Shown here one piece after another: positions 2,498 through 18,269 of a DNA stretch of 64,000 nucleotides. Under the pieces are notes generated by a model. The model worked only from the letters and a program-made list of their open reading frames with translations, made no database searches and had not been told where the DNA came from. How positions within the stretch are numbered: the first letter of the stretch is position 1; the number at the start of each line of letters is the position of its first letter. The stretch lies in the sequence record OQ722176.1. One strand, given 5' to 3'. The translations under genes were made by a program, and so were the position numbers.

Positions 2498-3016
2498 CTA
2501 TTTTCTGCGATTTGCTTTATTAGCTTTTCGCTTCGCTCTTCGCAGTTCTTTTCGTTTTGCTATTTTATCAGCACGTCTCACCGCGTCATAATCCGCTGCA
2601 CAAGACGCTGCGAACGCATCAGGCTTGAATACGGGCTCTTGACCCACATATCCCAAGATAGTCCCTTTAGCTTCGTTATACGCAATGTGAGAACGATGTG
2701 ACGGGTCAGGGTTGATGTCAACGTGAACTTCAAACCCGCGAGGGCCACACATTGGTTTGACTCGTAATGCAGTCTCACCAGCTTTGTATACTTCATTCAT
2801 CAAACGACTTCGAATACCGTCTTTGCAAGACATATAAGCAGGTTCTGTTTCGATAGTTTTGAATACTTGAGCGCCTTTACTACCCTCAAGGTGAATGATG
2901 ATTACAGTAGCGTAACTGATCATATCACTCTTACGCTTGCTATCACACCCGACATAGATCGTACTATTCGGGTGACTGTTATTGATAGCTGTTTCTATTG
3001 CTTCCCAATCGAACAT
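2498..3016 (-). CDS. YkuK/DUF458-like RNase H-fold protein
   Basis: IYVGCDS...YATVIIIH...RLMNEV...EVHVDIN...KPDAFAASCAAD motifs; start moved to ATG 3016 after GAGGTG SD. Confidence 0.75.
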   Translation of the reverse strand: MFDWEAIETAINNSHPNSTIYVGCDSKRKSDMISYATVIIIHLEGSKGAQVFKTIETEPAYMSCKDGIRSRLMNEVYKAGETALRVKPMCGPRGFEVHVDINPDPSHRSHIAYNEAKGTILGYVGQEPVFKPDAFAASCAADYDAVRRADKIAKRKELRRAKRKANKANRRK

Positions 3017-3032
3017 TGTCACCTCTGCAAAC

Positions 3033-3058
3033 AAAAAGGGCAGCATAATTGCCGCCCT
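3033..3058 (-). terminator. Intrinsic terminator after the vWA gene
   Basis: AGGGCGGCA/TGCTGCCCT hairpin + TTTT. Confidence 0.65.
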
Positions 3059-3065
3059 CGCTTAT

Positions 3066-4502
3066 TTAAAAGCTGTAGCGATCAACGCATACAGTTTTCA
3101 GCATGATCTTGACCGGCTCAAGTTCACCACCCAACAATGAAGTCAAGATTGATGGACTACAACCTGAAACCAACGCTGTACCCGCTTCGCCTGACTTAAC
3201 AGGAACGTTACCGATACGACCACGAATGTTCCAGAACACTAGTTGAGGCATTTCATAGCCTGCACGTGCGTACATGCCTTTGATTGCTTCGAAATTAGTA
3301 ATTTCGCCGCGACCATACCAACCACCACCGCGATTTGCTTCGTCGAATTCCATGTCGCTCATGATAAGCAACTTAGTTGGCATTTCTTCTTGTGAAAGTT
3401 TTGCCTTCTTCGCACGTTCTAGTAGAACGCTGAAACACTTGGTGATGTTAGTGCTCATGTCTTCGCCAGAGCGATTCATGTTGTCAAGACGCTCTTTCAG
3501 TGAGCTACCGCGCAACTGGTGGAAGTGCGGATCACTTGAGAACGAAATGAACTGGTCTTTGAAGATGCCTTCGTTACGTTCAGCAACGTAGATGCCTAGA
3601 GACATTGCAACTTGCTTACAAGAAACGCTTGAACGATCAGTACCTGCGTTGATCGGCGTGCTCATAGAGCCAGACACGTCTACAACAGGGATGATGCGCT
3701 CATCAGAACCTTCCATGTAGTTCGGTAGAGCTTTCCATTGCTCATTCGCTACAGATGCGTTACCGTGACTAACGCTTTTAACAACATCGTATGGGAACAA
3801 TGCAGCAGCGTTGATCTTCGCTTCACCTTTTTGAAGTGATTCGATGTAGCTTGTGTAACGTGTCGAAGCGTTACGACCGAATGCTTGTTGATAACGAGCA
3901 GACGCTACAGAAGGCAACTTACCGAAGTCGATTGCATCCCATTCTTGAGCACACATCTTTTGTTCAACGGTGTCAGACAAAAGAGCAAGAATCTTACGCC
4001 ACTGCTTCGCAGTCACACCAAGAGACTTGATTGTGCGCTTGAACACATGACCGTTTTTGCTGTTTTCACGTGGGAACCACTTCGCAGCAAGACCGTTTTT
4101 GTCATTGACAATTGCGTTTGACCACATAGTGATCGCGTCTTTTTCAAGTTTAGTACCGAATGCAACAATCAAGTCATCGAAACGACCTAATTCTGGTACT
4201 TTTGACATTACAGCACGAGCAACGTCTGGCTGTTCATTACAAAGTTTAGCGAACAAAGTACGGAAAGTACCACGTTCACCCGCGCCACCGCGAACGTCAC
4301 GAGACCATAGCAAGATGCGAGTCGCTAGTTCTGGGTTTTCTGCAAACGCACGACCGAACAGAGTTTTAGACTGATCGTTGCCACGCATAGCAGCAATACC
4401 GAAGAACAAGTTTAGACACTCGTTACCTGAAGTGCTGTGAGTAAGTGCACCGTTTGCTGTACGTGAATCGTTTGATTGCATAGCGTTCATAAATGCTGAC
4501 AT
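3066..4502 (-). CDS. DUF2828-like helical + vWA protein (Ro60/TROVE-like architecture)
   Basis: RDVRGGAGER and AAKWFPRE motifs, C-terminal vWA with MIDAS DVSGSM...T...SDMEFD; start moved to ATG 4502 after GAGGA SD. Confidence 0.75.
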   Translation of the reverse strand: MSAFMNAMQSNDSRTANGALTHSTSGNECLNLFFGIAAMRGNDQSKTLFGRAFAENPELATRILLWSRDVRGGAGERGTFRTLFAKLCNEQPDVARAVMSKVPELGRFDDLIVAFGTKLEKDAITMWSNAIVNDKNGLAAKWFPRENSKNGHVFKRTIKSLGVTAKQWRKILALLSDTVEQKMCAQEWDAIDFGKLPSVASARYQQAFGRNASTRYTSYIESLQKGEAKINAAALFPYDVVKSVSHGNASVANEQWKALPNYMEGSDERIIPVVDVSGSMSTPINAGTDRSSVSCKQVAMSLGIYVAERNEGIFKDQFISFSSDPHFHQLRGSSLKERLDNMNRSGEDMSTNITKCFSVLLERAKKAKLSQEEMPTKLLIMSDMEFDEANRGGGWYGRGEITNFEAIKGMYARAGYEMPQLVFWNIRGRIGNVPVKSGEAGTALVSGCSPSILTSLLGGELEPVKIMLKTVCVDRYSF

Positions 4503-4538
4503 TGTTGATTTCCTCATATTAAATTGCTGTATAATGTC
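4498..4538 (-). promoter_or_regulatory. Leader hairpin with UACAGCAA motif, occluding SD/AUG of the vWA gene
   Basis: GACAUU-A-UACAGCAA-UUUAAUAUGAGGAAAUCAAC-AAUGUC; the 3' stem strand contains the AUG. Confidence 0.65.
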
Positions 4539-4552
4539 GTTTTGATGTGATG

Positions 4553-4590
4553 ATTATACACGGATTTTAACCCGTGTAAACACTTTTTTG
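4553..4590 (-). promoter_or_regulatory. T4-type early (sigma70) promoter
   Basis: A-tract, GTTTAC-17-TATAAT. Confidence 0.75.
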
Positions 4591-7659: not shown

Positions 7660-7907
7660 AGACATTCGAGAAGTGTTTTTTTCGTCTTTCCTCAAATCTC
7701 AATTGACTATCTCGATGTTTCTCACCGAGAAAATACTCATGATTCAGCATGAGACCTATTTCGTTTGACAGTACGAACACCGTCTTAATGGTCATTTCCT
7801 ACCACGAGAATGCGACAGGCTCACGTCATAACTGAGAAAGCAGCTAGTGCGCCTCATTACTATTAAAGTTTGCTTCTTTGATTAGTAATAGTTGCTGTAC
7901 AATGTCT
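7660..7907 (-). ncRNA. ~250-nt structured RNA, copy A (UACAGCAA family)
   Basis: Closed by AGACAUU/AAUGUCU; shares covarying hairpins and blocks with 10333-10544. Confidence 0.65.
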
Positions 7908-10332: not shown

Positions 10333-10544
10333 AGACAATACCGAAGTGTTTTTTCGTCTTTGACATGAATCGGAGTTGACTATCTTGTTATTCACAACAA
10401 GCAAATATCGTCTGTTTCAGCGACGCGCCTATCTGACTATTTCCAGGCAGAGAGAATCTTTCCTTTCAAGCTGCGCCGAAGCACTGCCCAGGTGAAGATC
10501 ATTACCTTTTTTAAGTAATTTTAATTTGTTGCTGTATATTGTCT
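10333..10544 (-). ncRNA. ~210-nt structured RNA, copy B (UACAGCAA family)
   Basis: Closed by AGACAAUA/UAUUGUCU; paralogue of 7660-7907. Confidence 0.65.
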
Positions 10545-10606
10545 CTCAAATCATGCTCGTGATATGCCGAAGCAAGTATCATTCGCCGCATGATAGAGCT
10601 TAAATT

Positions 10607-10758: not shown

Positions 10759-10832
10759 TGGTGGACACGCAGGGAGTCGAACCCTATCTTCCTCATTGCA
10801 AGTGAGGCGCTTTCCCATTAAGCTAACGGCCC
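10759..10832 (-). tRNA. trnA: tRNA-Ala(TGC), distorted acceptor stem (possibly pseudo)
   Basis: G3:U70 kept; pairs 5-7 need a bulge. Confidence 0.7.
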
Positions 10833-11157: not shown

Positions 11158-11270
11158 GAGTGTCGTTACTTGCGTCGTCCGGACTAGAGATACCAACTCT
11201 AAACGGGAGTCGAACCCGAAACATTTCTTTTCATAGAAGAATATTAGTAAATTGTTTGCTGAAAACACTC
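11158..11270 (-). ncRNA. Circularly permuted tRNA-like RNA with UUCAGCAA motif (Y-RNA-like)
   Basis: GAGUGU/ACACUC closing stem; motif; anticodon arm UUCUU-CUAUGAA-AAGAA; T arm CGGG-UUCGACU-CCCG; loop-closed UAGAG/CUCUA stem. Confidence 0.65.
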
Positions 11271-11669: not shown

Positions 11670-11680
11670 TTGAATAAAAC

Positions 11681-11738
11681 AGTAATCCTTTTTGCTTTTT
11701 CCAAATAAAAGTTTTGTATTGTTTGCTGTAAGATTACT
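11681..11738 (-). ncRNA. Minimal 58-nt UACAGCAA-family RNA
   Basis: AGUAAUCU/GGAUUACU stem, UACAGCAA, CUUUU-AUUUGGA-AAAAG hairpin. Confidence 0.55.
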
Positions 11739-12368: not shown

Positions 12369-12482
12369 ATTACCTTCTCTTAAAAATTACAGCTTGCGTT
12401 CTTTGGTCTGTTTATCGCTGTCTGGGCTATACCCGCCGAGCGATCAATAGAGTAAGTTAAATTGCAGTATGCAAGCTAAAAT

Positions 12483-14044: not shown

Positions 14045-14069
14045 AAAAAAAGGACGCTATTTGCGTCCT
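14045..14069 (-). terminator. Intrinsic terminator
   Basis: AGGACGC/GCGTCCT hairpin + T tract. Confidence 0.7.
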
Positions 14070-14340
14070 CAAGTATACTTCTATGTTATACTATCGGACT
14101 ACAAGAGGGAATCCCAGTTTTGTTTTGCACACGGATTCGCTAGATACACGAATTCTGAGCGCAGAAAATCGCTGCGTAATGTCTCAGATGAATGTGTAAT
14201 CGAATGTGTCATTGAATGCTCTCTTGCAAAAAATAAAAATTGTTTTTGTTTGTATAATAGTACTTATAACACCAATTTTGACGATTTGCGGTATTTTCGC
14301 AGAAAATTGAAAAAAATTTCAACTTTCTGCGATCTTTCTA

Positions 14341-14574
14341 TCAGCCTAGGTGTTTTCGCTTATTCATTTCAACTAGAATTTCATCGTTGTAATGCTTGTT
14401 AAGCTGTACAAACTTCTTGTGCTGATCTTCAGTCAACTCATTCGTGTCATTCAGATGCTTCAAGAAGCCAAGAGGTTTACGAAACGATTTGCGATATTCA
14501 TTAAGACGCTCGTCTGACAGACCGCGCAGTTGTTTCGGAGTAAGCAATGTTTTATTGATATTGAAATTACTCAT
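14341..14574 (-). CDS. Hypothetical protein (77 aa)
   Basis: ATG 14574 after GTGAGG SD. Confidence 0.65.
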   Translation of the reverse strand: MSNFNINKTLLTPKQLRGLSDERLNEYRKSFRKPLGFLKHLNDTNELTEDQHKKFVQLNKHYNDEILVEMNKRKHLG

Positions 14575-14599
14575 GTTGTACCTCACTATGTTTTGAAAA

Positions 14600-14715
14600 T
14601 GGCAGTCGGGGCTGGATTCGAACCAGCGACCACGTGCTTAACAGGCAATTGAAAGAGTGCTGGAGCGATACTTGACAGTATCATTCTTCGTGCTCTACCA
14701 CTGAGCTACCCGACT
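14600..14715 (-). ncRNA. tRNA-Asn-like RNA with ~40-nt insertion (UCCAGCAC motif)
   Basis: Intact acceptor (G73, CCA), D and T arms; inserted hairpin + motif before GC-CUGUUAA-GC loop. Confidence 0.75.
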
Positions 14716-14720
14716 GTAAA

Positions 14721-15245
14721 TTATTTAACTTTGAACTTCAAATTTCGCCATTCAAAGTTGCGTTTGTTCTTTTCTTTGTAGAACGTATCCCAATCAATTG
14801 AAATCGGACAAGTCTGACTACCCACACGAGCGATAAACACGTCGTGAGTGTTGCTGTATCGCTCTCTAAGCTCTTTTACGCGCTTATCGTAGTTAGCGAT
14901 ATAGTCTGAACAAGCTTTATTGTACGCTGCTTTAGAGAAGCGTTTAGAAGCTTGAAAGTCATACCCAAGATACGGACGAATTACTCGAACACGTTCAGTC
15001 GACCATCCCATGTTGAAACTGTTCTCAATCTCACCCATGATCTTACCCGTCTTTTTACAACGAGCTAGGATAACCCAACAACGCTCACGTCGAAAATCTT
15101 TGCGTGTGTACACGTTGACATACTTTTCAATATAGTCATTGTACTTGTTGTTGTATATCGAGCGAAGTCTCGAACGTTCTTCAGGTGACATTGCGGCACG
15201 CTCTTCTTTTGAGAACGCTTGAGCAAATTTCAACGGAACATTCAT
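14721..15245 (-). CDS. Hypothetical protein (174 aa)
   Basis: ORF track; 4-nt overlap with upstream ORF. Confidence 0.7.
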   Translation of the reverse strand: MNVPLKFAQAFSKEERAAMSPEERSRLRSIYNNKYNDYIEKYVNVYTRKDFRRERCWVILARCKKTGKIMGEIENSFNMGWSTERVRVIRPYLGYDFQASKRFSKAAYNKACSDYIANYDKRVKELRERYSNTHDVFIARVGSQTCPISIDWDTFYKEKNKRNFEWRNLKFKVK

Positions 15246-15451
15246 ATCATACCTCTCTTACGCTTCAACTGACTGCGTTCGATTTGACTGAACATTTGCC
15301 TATCACGCGATTTGCTTCTACGAGAATTACCCCATCGAAACCCAGCACAAACACCATGTTGACCTTGCTTCAGCTTTTTGGCAAGCCAATGCGGAATATC
15401 TTCACCTTTGCGCTGATAGCGTTTAGCAATATCAGTATACGTTTTACCCAT
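15242..15451 (-). CDS. Small basic hypothetical protein (69 aa)
   Basis: ORF track; GGAGA SD. Confidence 0.6.
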   Translation of the reverse strand: MGKTYTDIAKRYQRKGEDIPHWLAKKLKQGQHGVCAGFRWGNSRRSKSRDRQMFSQIERSQLKRKRGMI

Positions 15452-15466
15452 AATATTCTCCGTGGA

Positions 15467-15514
15467 CGGGTGGGAGAATCGAACTCCCTACTGGCGCAAC
15501 ACATCGTCAACCCG
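15467..15514 (-). ncRNA. Second tRNA minihelix-like element
   Basis: CGGGU/ACCCG stem + GGGAG-UUCGAUU-CUCCC T arm, no D or anticodon arm. Confidence 0.45.
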
Positions 15515-15704
15515 ATAAGAGTTTCGAAGTAAGAGCCTATCAGCATATCAAATTCATTGTCTTTATTTCAACACATGAGAGTTCGACCTCTCACATGTTT
15601 TTTCTCGACAAGTCCGAGTGATTCAGCACCGTCGTAGATAGCGAGTCTGCGACTATACTAATGTTCGGCATACACTGCACACAGAGCACCTAGCCCCGCC
15701 ATAA

Positions 15705-15944
15705 TTATTTGCCGTAATGAAGTTTAGCCCACGCTGTATGTTCAGCTTTGATTTCATCTTCAGTACGAGTATCAATGACATCTTCAAAAGTCTCGTTTTC
15801 AAAACGAACAGTGATGTTTTCAAAACCCTTACGAGAAGCGTATTTCAATGCTTCTTCGCGAGTATCACCGTAACCAAACTGTTCGATGATTTTACCAGAA
15901 CGGCTCTCAAAAGTAACAGTTGCTTTGATTTTAGTGTCAGTCAT
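15705..15944 (-). CDS. Hypothetical protein (79 aa)
   Basis: Start moved to MTDTK, downstream of the promoter. Confidence 0.6.
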   Translation of the reverse strand: MTDTKIKATVTFESRSGKIIEQFGYGDTREEALKYASRKGFENITVRFENETFEDVIDTRTEDEIKAEHTAWAKLHYGK

Positions 15945-15978
15945 AATGTTCTCTTCTATGTTTCGTTTCGATGTAAGT

Positions 15979-16007
15979 ATTATCGGCTTACACGAAAACA
16001 AAGTCAA
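15979..16007 (-). promoter_or_regulatory. Early promoter
   Basis: A-tract, TTGACT-17-GATAAT. Confidence 0.6.
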
Positions 16008-16029
16008 GAACTTTTTTCATTATTTTAAC

Positions 16030-16107
16030 TGGTGACCCGCGTGGGACTCGAACCCAACTATCTTTCGGTTATGAGCCGACTGCTTTTACCAGTTAAGCTA
16101 ACGGGCC
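16030..16107 (-). tRNA. tRNA with CAT anticodon (Met or Ile2)
   Basis: Cloverleaf, CCA. Confidence 0.85.
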
Positions 16108-16108
16108 A

Positions 16109-16477
16109 TTATCTCTCAAGAAATCGACCTACTTTGGCAGCAAAGATGTTTGCTTCTTCTGCTATAAGCGCAGATGTCTTCACTTGATGAAACATGTCTT
16201 GTTGGTGTAGAAAATCAAGTTTATCTGCACAGAGCAACAATTCTTTAATCGTCCGTCTAATCTCTAGGCAATCAAGCTGACTAGTGTCAGGGTGATAGTT
16301 GAGATTATCTAACACAGGCAGTACTTGTTGATAGCAACCCATGCCGATGAAGTTTATCATAAGTCGATACTGCATTTCAACAGCGAATGAGCAATATTTT
16401 CTAAGATTGCGCTTTACAATCTCACAACGATGCAAAATACAATCTAGCTCGTCGTTTATGTCATCAAACTTATTCAT
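16109..16477 (-). CDS. Hypothetical protein (122 aa)
   Basis: ORF track; GAGG SD. Confidence 0.65.
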   Translation of the reverse strand: MNKFDDINDELDCILHRCEIVKRNLRKYCSFAVEMQYRLMINFIGMGCYQQVLPVLDNLNYHPDTSQLDCLEIRRTIKELLLCADKLDFLHQQDMFHQVKTSALIAEEANIFAAKVGRFLER

Positions 16478-16490
16478 AAAACCTCGAAAG

Positions 16491-16611
16491 TGGTGGAGAG
16501 TGGTGGATTTGAACCACCGACAAAAAGATTTACCTAGTTAGGGTTTGCAGCATGAATGCTTATCAGAATTCTTTAACATTCTTTTGCTCTACCAGACTGA
16601 GCTAACTCTCC
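16491..16611 (-). ncRNA. tRNA-shaped RNA with ~45-nt insertion (UGCUGCAA motif)
   Basis: Acceptor+CCA, D and T arms intact; AAAAGA/UCUUUU stem encloses GAUA-loop hairpin + motif. Confidence 0.75.
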
Positions 16612-16625
16612 GTTGTAAAAACATA

Positions 16626-16751
16626 TTGATGCGGGTGCAGGATTCGAACCTGCGTCACGATCTTATGAATGATATGCGAATTGATTGCCGTACAGATTCT
16701 TATCAGAATCAGTTTTTTTGCTACGTGTGCTAACCACTACACCAACCCGCA
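16626..16751 (-). ncRNA. tRNA-shaped RNA with insertion (UACGGCAA motif), no encoded CCA
   Basis: D and T arms intact; acceptor helix extends to 19 bp. Confidence 0.7.
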
Positions 16752-17023
16752 TCAATATGTTTTCGAGTTCTTGCGCAGACCTAACGGTAATTCCCTACGC
16801 AAGAACCAGTAATCCTTGTTTTATATTGCCTTAGCTAATCACAACACAACCCAATATCGTGCGCTTTAATTACGGGATTAATGACCCGTTCGCATGTGAT
16901 TAGCGTAAAAGTATGATTACGCACCTTTTCTTCTTCAATGTCCAAGGCAAATAGAACTATGAATACTAGTGCGAGAAGATAGACAATCAAATTGCTCACC
17001 TCGCTTTGTTAGTGAGAGGACAT

Positions 17024-17146
17024 TGGTCGAGTGTAACAGAATCGAACTGTTCCCACGATCTCCCTATGATATGCGTAAATTGGTTGCTGAATATAATCAT
17101 GTCTGATTACAGTATGCTACGTGTGCTGCCACTACACCAACACTCG
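17024..17146 (-). ncRNA. tRNA-shaped RNA with insertion (UUCAGCAA motif)
   Basis: Paralogue of 16626-16751; A73-CCA; AUC-AUAGGGA-GAU anticodon-like loop. Confidence 0.75.
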
Positions 17147-17161
17147 ACCAATGTACTCTCG

Positions 17162-17312
17162 ATATTTTAAATGTGCGCTACTTGCACGCCGACTGAGCGA
17201 ATTTTAACTCAGCTAGTTTTTGTTCGTGAGTTAGTCCGCTAAGACTTCTCGCTGCTCAGCAGAACTTAACTGCCCCTATGTATTCATTGCGGCTAGCGCA
17301 CATTTAAAATAT
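17162..17312 (-). ncRNA. ~150-nt multibranch RNA closed by a perfect 19-bp helix
   Basis: ATATTTTAAATGTGCGCTA / TAGCGCACATTTAAAATAT plus internal stems. Confidence 0.55.
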
Positions 17313-17313
17313 T

Positions 17314-17422
17314 ACTCATCTTCAGCAAAGAGACAGAAACGATGAGTCTAGTCTGTTTAATCAAGTTGTTCATCTTCAATGAAGAGGCGAGAACGATGAA
17401 CTCTAGCTCGCTTAATCAACTG
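17314..17422 (-). repeat. Two ~54-nt units, each an H-type RNA pseudoknot
   Basis: Six compensatory base-pair changes between units. Confidence 0.75.
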
Positions 17423-17427
17423 TGTTA

Positions 17428-17455
17428 ATCTTATCAGCTTTTCAGCGAAAGTCAA
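17428..17455 (-). promoter_or_regulatory. Early promoter
   Basis: A-tract, TTGACT-16-TAAGAT. Confidence 0.6.
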
Positions 17456-17521
17456 CATCTTTTTTTCAAGTATTTCATCGAGTTAAGATTTTGTTTTCTG
17501 TCTCTCGACTCGATGAAATAC

Positions 17522-17566: not shown

Positions 17567-17830
17567 TTAAGCGGAGATGATAATACCGCTTTCAGTCTCG
17601 CCTCGTTCAAGCGCAGCGTGCTTGATTTGAAGTTGCGAAACTGCTTGTTGAAGCTCAAGAATAGCTTTGTCGTAAAGTTTGTTGTTCTCTTTAAGCAAAG
17701 TAATCTGATCGGTCTGCAAACCAACTACGTACGTCAATAGAACGACGTTTTCATCGGAGTTCAGTGATTCAGGGTCTTCTTGATACTTTCGCAGTACTGC
17801 TTCAGTAGATAAGTCAGTCATTATTTTCAA
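17567..17830 (-). CDS. Hypothetical coiled-coil protein
   Basis: ORF track; heptad pattern. Confidence 0.65.
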   Translation of the reverse strand: MKIMTDLSTEAVLRKYQEDPESLNSDENVVLLTYVVGLQTDQITLLKENNKLYDKAILELQQAVSQLQIKHAALERGETESGIIISA

Positions 17831-18269
17831 CCCAATCTAGGTCTAGTGGTTCGAGATATTCATTAACAAGACGAACTTCAGTGTTAACGGACATCGGTGT
17901 GATAGCGTCGTCATACGATAACGTGACGTGCGGTTGATAGTCAGGGTAGTCGTGAGTACCACCGATAGAGATAAGGTCTTCGTGACGCGCTACAAGAGCA
18001 GGACATGACATCTTAGCAACGACAGCGTGCTTACCGTCTTGCGTTTTCCAACAGTCAATTTGTTCGACAGTGGCAACGAAAGTGGTATCTACTACAGGCA
18101 CATCAATTTGCTTACGACTATAAAGCACAGTCACGTGAAATTTATCTGGATCTAACGGATTTTTTAAACGAAGCGTTTGTTGCAATCGAACAAGCTCTTG
18201 CTTACTCGCTTCGTCTAATCTGATACCAACGTAAGTTCCCTGACTCTCAAGGAACTTAGATAGTTTCAT
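17814..18269 (-). CDS. 57B: gp57B / anti-CBASS Acb1-family 2H phosphoesterase
   Basis: Two HxT motifs (FHVTVLYS, PHVTLSY); T4 synteny 1-57A-57B-tRNAs. Confidence 0.85.
   Translation of the reverse strand: MKLSKFLESQGTYVGIRLDEASKQELVRLQQTLRLKNPLDPDKFHVTVLYSRKQIDVPVVDTTFVATVEQIDCWKTQDGKHAVVAKMSCPALVARHEDLISIGGTHDYPDYQPHVTLSYDDAITPMSVNTEVRLVNEYLEPLDLDWVENND

What the first reader, a model, noticed from the sequence alone, without database searches (positions are those of the whole stretch)
14600..17146. Four tRNA-shaped RNAs (116-126 nt) with a conserved insertion module between the D arm and an anticodon-like loop
14600-14715, 16491-16611, 16626-16751 and 17024-17146 keep the acceptor stem, D arm and T arm, but carry [hairpin]-[CAGCAA-like motif]-[linker, CAAUU-containing in three of four]-[small hairpin]. 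The residual loops read CU-GUU-AA (Asn, matching G73), CU-AAC-UA, AUUCAUAA (8 nt) and AU-AGG-GA. tRNA finders would call these pseudo-tRNAs or intron-containing, but the insertion is conserved with compensatory changes, which argues for function. Established: T4's tRNA cluster encodes two stable non-tRNA RNAs (RNA C and D) of unknown function, which may be analogues. Inference: tRNA mimics or decoys for anticodon nucleases or uncharged-tRNA sensors, carried by the vWA protein.
Basis: partly seen in the sequence, partly recalled or inferred. Interest (0 to 1): 0.82.

Follow-up and report, generated by a model that had tools for sequence, protein, structure and literature searches.

The report
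tRNA-shaped partner RNAs for phage Ro60
Four long "pseudo-tRNAs" in this Vibrio phage are conserved tRNA-shaped RNAs whose anticodon arm carries a small module, and that module's signature sequence also sits next to the gene for a Ro60-like RNA-binding protein in many unrelated phages, so they are most likely that protein's partner RNAs.

Summary
The window is Vibrio phage VS1/VS2, a relative of KVP40. The four minus-strand elements keep the acceptor, D and T arms. Each carries a 41-51 nt module in the anticodon arm: an A-rich linker, a 7-bp covarying hairpin with a GNRA-like loop, an invariant U-N-C-N-G-C-A(A) motif, and a small hairpin.

KVP40 annotates two of them as tRNA pseudogenes. The same architecture occurs in Aeromonas, cyanobacterial and 350-kb enterobacterial phages and in about 50 viral metagenome contigs.

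The module's motif is strongly and strand-specifically enriched just downstream of this gene family: 123 hits in the first 500 nt across 80 loci, against about 10 background. It also marks free-standing stem-plus-motif RNAs in this window's tRNA cluster and the gene's own leader.

Best reading (confidence 0.6): these are Y-RNA-like ligands of the phage Ro60 paralogue, built on an unpermuted tRNA scaffold. Binding itself is inferred, not shown.

- T4 rnaC and rnaD are not homologues.
- Splicing into working tRNAs is unlikely as a general explanation.
- The nuclease-decoy idea was not tested.

I rate this a new variant of a known kind.

The parts
14600..14715 (-). E1: tRNA-Asn-like RNA, 112-nt body plus G73 and an encoded CCA, with a module in the anticodon stem
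   Evidence: Rfam tRNA 48.4 bits. R1 96 bits. Anticodon loop CUGUUAA. Annotated tRNA-Pseudo-3 in KVP40.
14648..14688 (-). E1 module (41 nt): hairpin 14667-14682 with GUCA loop; motif UCCAGCAC at 14657-14664
   Evidence: alignment A3
16491..16611 (-). E2: tRNA-like RNA whose 5-bp anticodon stem is capped by the module; CCA encoded
   Evidence: Rfam tRNA 55.8 bits. R1 93 bits. Annotated tRNA-Pseudo-4 in KVP40.
16529..16579 (-). E2 module (51 nt): hairpin 16554-16571 with GAUA loop; motif UGCUGCAA at 16545-16552; small hairpin 16532-16544
16626..16751 (-). E3: tRNA-like RNA with a module between stem positions 28 and 29 and an 8-nt loop AUUCAUAA
   Evidence: R1 116.5 bits
16674..16723 (-). E3 module (50 nt): hairpin 16695-16710 with GAUA loop; motif UACGGCAA at 16685-16692
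17024..17146 (-). E4: tRNA-like RNA with a module between positions 28 and 29, loop AUAGGGA, CCA encoded
   Evidence: R1 92 bits
17071..17119 (-). E4 module (49 nt): hairpin 17092-17111 with GACA loop; motif UUCAGCAA at 17084-17091
3066..4517 (-). Ro60-like protein gene (DUF2828 + DUF7788/vWA). The likely true start is the ATG at 4502, which follows a GAGGAAA Shine-Dalgarno sequence.
   Evidence: Pfam. AF2 model with pLDDT 77. Foldseek hits Ro60 9l5y at E 4e-8 and 1yvr at E 3e-6. Invariant D280-x-S282-x-S284. tblastn reaches mycobacteriophage 'Ro-like RNA binding protein'.
4524..4531 (-). The same motif (UACAGCAA) in the leader of the Ro60-like gene, about 8 nt before the Shine-Dalgarno sequence and downstream of a TTTACA-16-TATAAT promoter-like site (about 4553-4580)
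   Evidence: Sequence read directly. Also present in VH7D (L015).
11680..11737 (-). Free-standing stem + UUACAGCAA small RNA unit just after tRNA-Trp
   Evidence: Fold. Rfam Dicty_Class_I_RNA 31.8 bits, below its gathering score of 41.5. Compensatory U-A to C-G change against KVP40.
12380..12478 (-). Free-standing unit after tRNA-Tyr: an 8-bp stem, with UACUGCAA directly after its 5' strand and an A-rich run before its 3' strand
   Evidence: conserved in KVP40
10440..10550 (-). Free-standing unit: stem GAGAGA/UCUCUC enclosing UACAGCAA
17522..17549 (-). Promoter-like site (TTGACT-16-TAGAAT) upstream of E4
   Evidence: Consensus scan only
14050..14070 (-). Terminator-like hairpin with a T run, downstream of E1
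   Evidence: Consensus scan only

Best explanation
The four RNAs are tRNA-derived noncoding RNAs that act as RNA partners (Y-RNA-like cofactors) of the phage's Ro60-like DUF2828/vWA protein.

Shown here:
- Each RNA keeps a tRNA body. In three of the four the CCA end is encoded.
- Each presents a conserved module from the anticodon stem. The module is a helix end with an A-rich strand running into its 5' side and the single-stranded motif U-N-C-N-G-C-A-A leaving its 3' side.
- That same helix-plus-motif arrangement marks the small RNAs encoded directly beside DUF2828 genes in many phage lineages.

Inferred:
- The RNAs are transcribed with the tRNA region and trimmed by host RNase P and 3' processing enzymes like tRNAs. 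This would make them stable.
- The Ro60-like protein binds the module, as Ro60 binds the motif-bearing stem of Y RNAs.
- The tRNA-shaped domain then tethers the protein to tRNA-handling or RNA-degrading enzymes (PNPase in the known Ro60 systems), or gates its RNA-binding cavity.
- The complex would serve RNA surveillance, processing or repair during infection.
- The motif in the protein's own mRNA leader suggests autoregulation.
For: (1) These are real, selected RNAs. They are 97-100% identical across the genus against about 85% for the region. The hairpin covaries and C, G, C, A are invariant.

(2) The family spans distant phages:
- KVP40-like Vibrio phages.
- Aeromonas phages Aeh1 and AsFcp_2.
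- Synechococcus phage BUCT-ZZ01.
- Serratia phage BF and Yersinia phage fHe-Yen9-04.
- About 50 IMG/VR contigs.

(3) The ORF at 3066-4517 is Ro60-like.
- Foldseek matches Ro60 structures 9l5y and 1yvr with probability 1.0.
- It has a MIDAS-type DxSxS.
- It is a full-length homologue of the mycobacteriophage 'Ro-like RNA binding protein'. In phage JoeDirt that gene is followed by a YrlA-like RNA (39.8 bits).

(4) Every lineage with module RNAs that I checked encodes the protein, including Serratia phage BF (E 1e-149).

(5) The motif is tied to the gene family.
- U-N-C-N-G-C-A-A occurs 123 times in the first 500 nt downstream of DUF2828 genes on the gene strand in 80 loci.
- Other 500-nt bins hold mostly about 5-15 (3-23) and the opposite strand holds 21.
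- 70 of 80 loci have it within 700 nt, usually at +20 to +40.
- The 179 other permutations of the same letters give a mean of 6.9 and a maximum of 31.

(6) The local architecture matches. In those loci a covarying 6-7 bp stem is followed directly by the motif. Flank preferences that were not used for selection agree between the two sets: U at -4 in about 90% of both, and a G-poor 3' flank.

(7) In five contigs a divergent DUF2828/DUF7788 gene lies less than 500 nt upstream, on the same strand, of arrays of module units. Some of these have permuted tRNA-like cores. One hits Rfam YrlA at 46.4 bits.

(8) Within the window:
- The motif occurs 13 times against 2.0 expected on the transcribed strand of the tRNA region, and twice on the other strand.
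- It marks free-standing stem-plus-motif units.
- It occurs in the Ro60-like gene's leader.

(9) Established background:
- Bacterial Y RNAs (YrlA) combine a tRNA-like domain with a Ro60-binding stem that carries a short conserved motif, GNCGAAN0-1G (PMC4201824).
- A phage Ro60 binds phage-encoded Y-like RNAs and host PNPase (PMC12135203).
Against: - No binding, expression or processing data exist. The protein-RNA link is entirely comparative.
- In this window the gene lies 10-13 kb from the RNAs, and in Serratia phage BF about 190 kb away.
- DUF2828 genes often sit beside tRNA clusters in general, so part of the co-occurrence could reflect shared residence in tRNA regions.
- Most DUF2828 loci have the motif in small non-tRNA RNAs, not in tRNA-shaped ones. 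Only 2 of 79 non-Vibrio loci have module tRNAs within 6 kb.
- The motif differs from the canonical Ro60 motif, and the protein is a paralogue, not a Pfam TROVE hit.
- Many modules leave an intact, tRNA-like anticodon loop. The E1 type keeps Asn GUU and mostly G73 across Vibrio, Aeromonas and cyanophage lineages. A pure protein-tether model does not need this.
- The 80 loci are phylogenetically related: 14 protein clusters at 70% identity, of which 9 have the motif.
Confidence: 0.6

Rival explanations
1. These are intron-containing tRNA genes. The module is an intervening sequence removed by an unknown endonuclease and a phage RNA ligase (or by self-cleavage) to give working tRNAs such as tRNA-Asn(GUU).
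For: - Removing the insert always restores a 5-bp anticodon stem, with compensatory changes in the inner pairs: AUC/GAU, UGC/GCA, AGC/GCU, ACA/UGU and ACU/AGU.
- Many loops are 7 nt with U33 and a purine at position 37. They read as Asn, Lys, Ile, Tyr, Glu or Leu anticodons.
- The E1 type keeps GUU and mostly G73 in three phage families.
- These phages carry RNA ligase and end-healing genes. Serratia phage BF has Rnl1, Pnkp and a further RNA ligase.
Against: - E2 and the KVP40 Pseudo-5 type have no anticodon loop to restore.
- E3-type loops are 8-9 nt in several phages, and their 'anticodon' changes between close relatives.
- The insertion point varies: 28/29, 29/30 and 31/32.
- The window already has two ordinary tRNA-Asn(GUU) genes.
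- No ribozyme or intron family matches the region, even at E up to 10.
- By eye I found no conserved bulge-helix-bulge motif.
- The same motif occurs in RNAs that are not tRNA-shaped, next to DUF2828 genes.
Confidence: 0.12
2. These are decoys or sponges for host tRNA-targeting defences (anticodon nucleases and similar). The exposed anticodon hairpin attracts the nuclease, and the module blocks or traps it.
For: - Anticodon-like loops resembling Asn, Lys, Tyr and Glu are retained on a stable tRNA body. From my own knowledge, untested here, these are the classes attacked by known anticodon nucleases.
- The window carries other counter-defence genes, for example Acb1 at 17814-18269.
Against: - There is no specific evidence for this idea.
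- Loops of orthologous elements differ between close relatives, and some members have none.
- It does not explain the invariant U-N-C-N-G-C-A-A motif or its linkage to DUF2828 genes.
Confidence: 0.1
3. The module is a DNA-level mobile or gene-converting insert that targets tRNA genes, and the hosts are decaying pseudogenes.
For: - In BUCT-ZZ01 two different tRNA bodies carry an identical module.
- The insertion point varies.
- KVP40 annotates the elements as pseudogenes.
Against: - The tRNA bodies stay fully base-paired: acceptor, D and T stems are 100% paired, with many compensatory changes.
- Identity within the genus exceeds that of the flanking DNA.
- The motif is strand-specific with respect to transcription.
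- The hairpin covaries as RNA.
Confidence: 0.05

Closest known systems
YrlA-type bacterial Y RNAs (Rfam RF02553), partners of Ro60/Rsr
   Same: - A tRNA-like domain with T arm, D arm and acceptor helix.
- A protein-binding element at the place of the anticodon arm.
- A short conserved single-stranded motif next to a helix.
- Encoded by genomes that carry a Ro60-family protein. Several paralogous RNAs per genome.
- In related contigs the module flanks permuted tRNA-like cores, and one scores 46.4 bits on the YrlA model.
   Different: - The window's RNAs are not permuted. Their ends lie in the acceptor stem, CCA is encoded in three of the four, and most keep an anticodon-like hairpin.
- The motif is U-N-C-N-G-C-A-A, not GNCGAAN0-1G.
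- The protein is the DUF2828 paralogue, not a Pfam TROVE protein.
- The gene is 10-13 kb away rather than within 2 kb.
- The only YrlA hit in the window (30 bits) is the known tandem-tRNA artefact (PMC4201824).
Class I RNAs of dictyostelid amoebae (Rfam RF01414)
   Same: - A short covarying stem joining the two ends.
- An unstructured conserved motif, CCUUACAGCAA, directly after the 5' strand (PMC7919456). This is the same core and placement as in the phage stem-plus-motif RNAs.
- Two phage units hit this model full-length but below its threshold: 31.8 bits in the window and 33.9 bits in L115.
   Different: - They are eukaryotic and were reported as absent outside Dictyostelia.
- The known direct binder is an RRM protein (Rnp1A/CIBP).
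- They are not embedded in tRNA.
- Both hits are below the gathering score of 41.5, so the resemblance may be chance or convergence.
T4 stable RNAs rnaC and rnaD (species 1 and 2)
   Same: They are non-tRNA stable RNAs encoded in the tRNA cluster of a T4-type phage. rnaC ends in a T-arm-like hairpin and an acceptor-like stem.
   Different: They have no module and no U-N-C-N-G-C-A-A motif. On R1, rnaC scores 12.8 bits through its T arm only, and rnaD does not match.
Intron-containing tRNA genes (bacterial and phage group I introns; archaeal protein-spliced introns)
   Same: An intervening segment in the anticodon arm whose removal restores a canonical stem.
   Different: - The insert is only 38-51 nt and matches no group I or other ribozyme model.
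- It sits in the 5' strand of the stem at varying positions.
- Some members have no anticodon loop.
Engineered 'tRNA scaffold' RNAs (my own knowledge; not tested here)
   Same: A foreign RNA module replaces or extends the anticodon arm, so the chimera is processed and stabilised like a tRNA.
   Different: Those are laboratory constructs. The RNAs here would be a natural counterpart.

Membership tests
Canonical decoding tRNA | Acceptor, D and T arms with conserved loop nucleotides | tested here: met
   All three stems are 100% paired across 41 distinct sequences. The T loop reads GUUCRANUC.
Canonical decoding tRNA | Uninterrupted 5-bp anticodon stem with a 7-nt loop (U33, purine 37) | tested here: not met
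   The 5' strand is interrupted by 41-50 nt in E1, E3 and E4. E3 has an 8-nt loop. E2 has no anticodon loop. ARAGORN rejects all four.
YrlA / Y RNA | tRNA-like domain with T and D arms | tested here: met
YrlA / Y RNA | A Ro60-family protein encoded in the same genome, usually nearby | tested here: met
   A Ro60-like ORF lies at 3066-4517, 10-13 kb away. In other lineages the distance is 0.2-2.5 kb: BUCT-ZZ01, Aeh1, L069, L106, L116, L146 and L150. In Serratia phage BF it is about 190 kb.
YrlA / Y RNA | Permuted topology: the 5' and 3' ends form the protein-binding stem and the acceptor helix is closed by a loop | tested here: not met
   The ends lie in the acceptor stem. Permuted relatives do exist in L105, L106, L115 and L122.
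YrlA / Y RNA | GNCGAAN0-1G motif; score at or above the Rfam gathering threshold (69 bits) | tested here: not met
   The motif is U-N-C-N-G-C-A-A. The only hit, at 30 bits, spans two adjacent elements.
YrlA / Y RNA | Physical binding to the Ro60 protein | not testable with these tools
   Needs immunoprecipitation or gel-shift experiments.
Ro60 / TROVE-vWA proteins (for ORF 3066-4517) | Helical-repeat ring followed by a vWA domain with a MIDAS DxSxS motif | tested here: met
   The AF2 model has helices 33-262 followed by an alpha/beta domain. Foldseek top hits are Ro60 9l5y and 1yvr, TM 0.5-0.56. D280, S282 and S284 are invariant.
Ro60 / TROVE-vWA proteins (for ORF 3066-4517) | Sequence match to Pfam TROVE or to solved Ro60 chains | tested here: not met
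   Pfam gives DUF2828 + DUF7788 only. phmmer against PDB sequences finds no Ro60. Homology to the phage 'Ro-like RNA binding protein' is clear: 33% identity over the full length.
Self-splicing or self-cleaving RNA in a tRNA gene | Match to a group I intron or small ribozyme model | tested here: not met
   No such Rfam hit at E up to 10 in 14300-17500.
Dictyostelid Class I RNA (for the free-standing unit 11680-11737) | Terminal 6-bp stem plus the 11-nt motif; Rfam gathering score 41.5 | tested here: inconclusive
   Full-length alignment at 31.8 bits, E 0.004 in a 5.2-kb search. The stem is supported by one compensatory change.

The most novel reading that the evidence does not exclude
The helix-plus-U-N-C-N-G-C-A-A element would define a large, unrecognised class of partner RNAs for the DUF2828 branch of the Ro60 family. 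It would occur across many phage lineages in three forms: free-standing small RNAs, permuted YrlA-like RNAs and intact tRNA scaffolds. The same protein-RNA recognition code would be shared with the Class I RNAs of dictyostelid amoebae, whose origin and protein partners are largely unknown.
Probability: 0.3. Interest if true: 0.9.

Novelty: new variant of a known kind. Interest (0 to 1): 0.8.

Why it matters
- Ro60 and Y RNAs are a conserved but poorly understood RNA-surveillance system. Partner RNAs are known for only a few bacteria and phages.
- This result would give the abundant phage DUF2828 branch a predicted RNA ligand. That branch occurs in 711 phage records here, including FelixO1-like, T4-like, Listeria, Staphylococcus and Campylobacter phages.
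- It supplies a simple, testable recognition motif.
- It explains 'tRNA pseudogenes' that have sat unexplained in KVP40-type genomes since those genomes were annotated.
- It shows that a natural intact tRNA can serve as a scaffold for a protein-binding module.
- It links the Ro60-like protein to phage tRNA clusters, which suggests a role in tRNA transcript processing, quality control or repair during infection.
- The motif shared with dictyostelid Class I RNAs, if not coincidental, would open a question about those RNAs as well.

Tried and rejected
- **T4 rnaC/rnaD homology.** Rejected.
- **Known ribozyme, riboswitch or intron families in the region.** None found at E up to 10. No Rfam family at gathering threshold covers the DUF2828-adjacent RNAs in 11 loci.
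- **YrlA hit at 16557-16675 (30 bits).** It spans the T arm of E3 and the D arm of E2. This is the tandem-tRNA artefact that the YrlA authors warned about.
- **Pairing of the CNGCA motif with the 5' linker** (for example GUAGC with GCAAC). It is not consistent across types, so I treat the motif as single-stranded (by eye).
- **Bulge-helix-bulge splice motif.** None is conserved (by eye).
- **The motif as the reverse complement of a T4 MotA-box-like promoter element (TTGCTG...).** Considered and rejected.
  - It lies inside tRNA-like genes.
  - It is strand-locked to the RNA and to an adjacent covarying stem.
  - KVP40-type phages are reported to lack MotA (PMC1524935).
- **Sequence search of the protein against PDB chains.** It gave only spurious repeat-protein hits. 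The structural search was needed.
- **Papers and supplements not held.** The KVP40 genome paper, the Avesson 2011 Class I RNA paper and the jumbo-phage supplement were unavailable. I therefore could not check what was originally said about the KVP40 pseudo-tRNAs or which proteins co-purify with Class I RNA.
- **First structure job.** I reran it without them.
- **Literature searches.** They found no prior description of the module or of a DUF2828-associated RNA.


Full report
**What the window is.** The 3-kb stretch around the finding is 100% identical to Vibrio phage VS1 and vB_VspM_VS2. It is 83-95% identical to KVP40, nt-1, phi-pp2 and other T4-type vibriophages. All genes in this region run on the minus strand. 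ARAGORN finds 27 ordinary tRNAs between 7919 and 16107.

**The observation.**
- Detection. The four elements are real and at the stated coordinates. Rfam's tRNA model accepts E1 and E2 only by skipping 54 and 46 nt in the anticodon arm. ARAGORN rejects all four. A simple scan for T arm, 7-bp acceptor stem and D stem recovers all four at 112-122 nt.
- Insertion point. In E1, E3 and E4 the insert splits the 5' strand of the anticodon stem after two base pairs. The remaining three pairs, the loop and the whole 3' strand are contiguous. In E2 a full 5-bp stem is capped by the module.
- Loops.
- Annotation. KVP40 annotates the counterparts of E1 and E2 as tRNA-Pseudo-3 and -4, and a fifth paralogue absent from this window as Pseudo-5. 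phi-pp2 annotates five long tRNAs at the corresponding positions.

**Conservation and structure.**
- E1 and E4 are 97-100% identical across the genus, while the region as a whole is about 85% identical.
- An alignment of 42 distinct members (A3) shows the module plan: an A-rich linker, a 7-8 bp hairpin with a mostly GNRA-type loop, then U-N-C-N-G-C-A(A). C, G, C and A are invariant.
- On the model-based alignment of 54 members the acceptor, D and T stems are 100% paired. Seven hairpin pairs covary extensively. The whole structure is 90% paired against 62% in column shuffles (0 of 500 reach it) and 34-44% when partners are slid.
- The composite 5-bp anticodon stem can be restored in 37 of the 40 distinct members (4 of 5 pairs in the other three), with compensatory changes in the inner pairs. 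The insertion point varies: 28/29, 29/30, 31/32, or the whole loop.

**Distribution.**
- A distant blastn search and follow-up found the same architecture in several lineages:
  - Aeromonas phages AsFcp_2 and Aeh1.
  - Synechococcus phage BUCT-ZZ01.
  - The 350-kb Eneladusvirus phages Serratia BF and Yersinia fHe-Yen9-04.
  - An IMG/VR contig.
- The covariance model R1 separates the family (71-117 bits) from ordinary tRNAs (below 47 bits).
- A sequence pattern taken from the module, plus the T loop, pulled 55 stretches from IMG/VR. About 50 of them R1 confirms. One contig has five in tandem.
- T4 rnaC and rnaD do not belong to the family.

**The 'vWA protein'.**
- ORF 3066-4517 has Pfam DUF2828 and DUF7788 domains.
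- Its AlphaFold model (pLDDT 77, pTM 0.76) has as top structural matches Ro60 from Thermus phage phiLo (E 4e-8) and Xenopus Ro60 (E 3e-6). Isolated vWA domains follow.
- D280, S282 and S284 are invariant, as in a MIDAS site.
- tblastn finds the family in 711 phage records. These include mycobacteriophage proteins annotated 'Ro-like RNA binding protein' at 33% identity over the full length.
- In mycobacteriophage JoeDirt the gene is followed by a permuted tRNA-like RNA that scores 39.8 bits on YrlA.
- Published work establishes two relevant points.
  - Bacterial Y RNAs of the YrlA type combine a tRNA-like domain with a Ro60-binding stem carrying GNCGAAN0-1G (PMC4201824).
  - A phage Ro60 binds phage-encoded Y-like RNAs and host PNPase (PMC12135203).

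**Linking RNA and protein.**
- Co-occurrence. Every lineage with module RNAs that I checked has the protein.
  - It is in the window itself.
  - In AsFcp_2, Aeh1 and BUCT-ZZ01 it lies 0.2-2.6 kb upstream.
  - In L069 it is also nearby.
  - Serratia phage BF has it too. I had to fetch most of that genome to find BF_0180, beside an RNA ligase gene (E 1e-149).
- Divergent genes next to module arrays. Among the 55 pattern hits, 9 stretches contain a DUF2828-family ORF. In five of these a divergent 530-580 aa DUF2828/DUF7788 gene lies less than 500 nt upstream of arrays of module units on the same strand. Some arrays have permuted tRNA-like cores. One scores 46.4 bits on YrlA.
- Motif enrichment, which I regard as the decisive result. 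The 8-mer U-N-C-N-G-C-A-A is concentrated immediately downstream of DUF2828 genes on the gene strand.
  - There are 123 hits in the first 500 nt of 80 IMG/VR loci. Other bins hold mostly about 5-15 (3-23), and the opposite strand holds 21.
  - 70 of 80 loci have it within 700 nt, typically 20-40 nt after the stop codon and again about 60 nt later.
  - The 179 other permutations of the same letters average 6.9 hits, with a maximum of 31.
  - 9 of 14 protein clusters at 70% identity show it.
- Local architecture. In these loci the motif directly follows the 5' strand of a covarying 6-7 bp stem, and an A-rich run precedes the 3' strand. This is the same helix-end geometry as in the module.
- Independent flanks. 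Positions that were not used for selection agree between the two sets: U at -4 in about 90% of both, and a G-poor 3' flank.

**Inside the window.**
- The motif occurs 13 times against 2.0 expected on the transcribed strand of the tRNA region, and twice on the other strand. KVP40 gives 9 against 2.0.
- Besides E2-E4 (E1's copy ends in C, so the strict 8-mer count omits it), it marks free-standing stem-plus-motif units after tRNA-Trp, tRNA-Tyr and elsewhere.
- The unit at 11680-11737 aligns full-length to Rfam's Dictyostelium Class I RNA model at 31.8 bits, below the threshold of 41.5. It shows a compensatory U-A to C-G change against KVP40.
- The motif also sits in the leader of the Ro60-like gene, about 8 nt before the Shine-Dalgarno sequence and downstream of a good promoter-like site.
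- A FelixO1-like phage has four such units among the tRNAs that follow its DUF2828 gene.
- Consensus scans place a promoter-like site upstream of E4 and a terminator-like site after E1. This is weak evidence.

**Interpretation.**
- Shown: a widespread, selected family of tRNA-shaped RNAs carrying a defined module; a Ro60-like protein in the same genomes; and a strong, strand-specific association of the module's motif with that gene family.
- Inferred: the protein binds the helix-plus-motif element. The tRNA body provides processing, stability and a handle for tRNA-binding or RNA-degrading enzymes, as Y RNAs do for Ro60. The leader motif mediates autoregulation.
- Unexplained: the tether model does not explain why many members keep a proper anticodon loop. 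The E1 type is Asn-like, mostly with G73, in three phage families. A role for synthetase or modification-enzyme recognition, or for splicing in a subset, stays open.

**Rivals.**
- Splicing into functional tRNAs is weakened in four ways.
  - Some members have no anticodon loop.
  - Loop lengths and insertion points vary.
  - The window already has two normal tRNA-Asn genes, so E1 would be redundant.
  - No ribozyme or intron model matches the region.
- The decoy idea has no specific support and does not explain the motif.
- Decay or a DNA-level insert is contradicted by perfect stem maintenance and by conservation above that of the flanks.

**Novelty.**
- The RNAs themselves have long been annotated as pseudo-tRNAs.
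- I found no description of the module, of its motif, or of any RNA partner for DUF2828 proteins, in Rfam release 15 or in the searchable literature.
- I file this as a new variant of the Y-RNA/tRNA-mimic kind: unpermuted, with a new motif, and with a paralogous Ro60.
- The resemblance to dictyostelid Class I RNAs covers the same core motif, the same placement next to a short terminal stem, and two sub-threshold full-length model hits. It is recorded as a lead, not a finding.

Noticed in passing
window 15462-15712 (-): A roughly 250-nt RNA-like element. It is closed by an acceptor-like stem and a good T arm (GGGAG UUCGAUU CUCCC) and encloses about 190 nt of predicted structure (z -2.9). It matches no Rfam family and ARAGORN makes no call. 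It could be a tRNA-like RNA with a large insert or a tmRNA-like RNA.
   Followed up: partly
window 17160-17312 (-): About 120 nt enclosed by a 12-bp long-range stem (AAAUGUGCGCUA...UAGCGCACAUUU). It lies between the promoter-like site and E4 and may be another structured RNA.
   Followed up: no
window 17310-17420: Two tandem copies, each about 50 nt, of a hairpin plus a downstream segment. The compensatory differences (ACAGA/UCUGU against GCGAG/CUCGC) suggest a pseudoknot. Read on the plus strand, the first copy contains UUCAGCAA right after its 5' stem strand.
   Followed up: no
window 11680-11737, ~12380-12478, ~10440-10550, ~7800-7900, ~11170-11270 (-): Free-standing stem + U-N-C-N-G-C-A-A units scattered between tRNA genes. 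They are conserved in KVP40. One gives a sub-threshold hit to Rfam's Dictyostelium Class I RNA model.
   Followed up: partly
window 4524-4531 (-) and ~4553-4580 (-): The Ro60-like gene's leader carries the same motif just before the ribosome-binding site, behind a TTTACA-16-TATAAT promoter-like site. This suggests autoregulation. The annotated ATG at 4517 is probably not the true start; the ATG at 4502 fits the family's N-terminus and has a Shine-Dalgarno sequence.
   Followed up: partly
loci L016-L094 (IMG/VR), first 100 nt after the DUF2828 stop codon: A conserved small RNA with two U-A-C-A-G-C-A-A motifs and a covarying 6-7 bp stem. It is often preceded by a TATAAAGA-like late-promoter-like sequence. 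Rfam has no family for it.
   Followed up: partly
L009 3876-3993 (AsFcp_2), L065 9939-10055 (Aeh1), L005 ~3950-4060 (XZ1): A different odd tRNA-like RNA of about 117 nt, with a second T-arm-like hairpin in the variable-arm position. It sits next to the module RNAs.
   Followed up: no
many DUF2828 loci (e.g. L040, L047-L052, L056, L057, L096): The Ro60-like gene commonly sits at the head of a co-oriented tRNA cluster. All tRNA hits in those loci are on the gene's strand. L049 and L122 also carry a phage tmRNA.
   Followed up: partly
L102 1-3003 and L100-L101 (Serratia phage BF): BF's Ro60-like gene (BF_0180) follows an RNA ligase gene. The genome also encodes Rnl1, Pnkp, CCA-adding and cyclic-phosphodiesterase enzymes, TyrRS and a tRNA-His guanylyltransferase.
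   Followed up: no
window 17814-18269 (-) and 2498-3046 (-): An Acb1 anti-CBASS phosphodiesterase homologue (E 4e-46). An RNase H-like (PF04308) gene lies immediately downstream of the Ro60-like gene.
   Followed up: no
window 10762-10832 (-): A tRNA that Rfam calls (46.3 bits) but ARAGORN does not. From its place in the gene order it probably corresponds to KVP40 tRNA-Pseudo-1, though I did not align the two.
   Followed up: no
L105 2047-2112 (-): A near-threshold type-P1 twister ribozyme hit (59.5 bits, gathering score 67.2) a few kb from a divergent DUF2828 gene.
   Followed up: no
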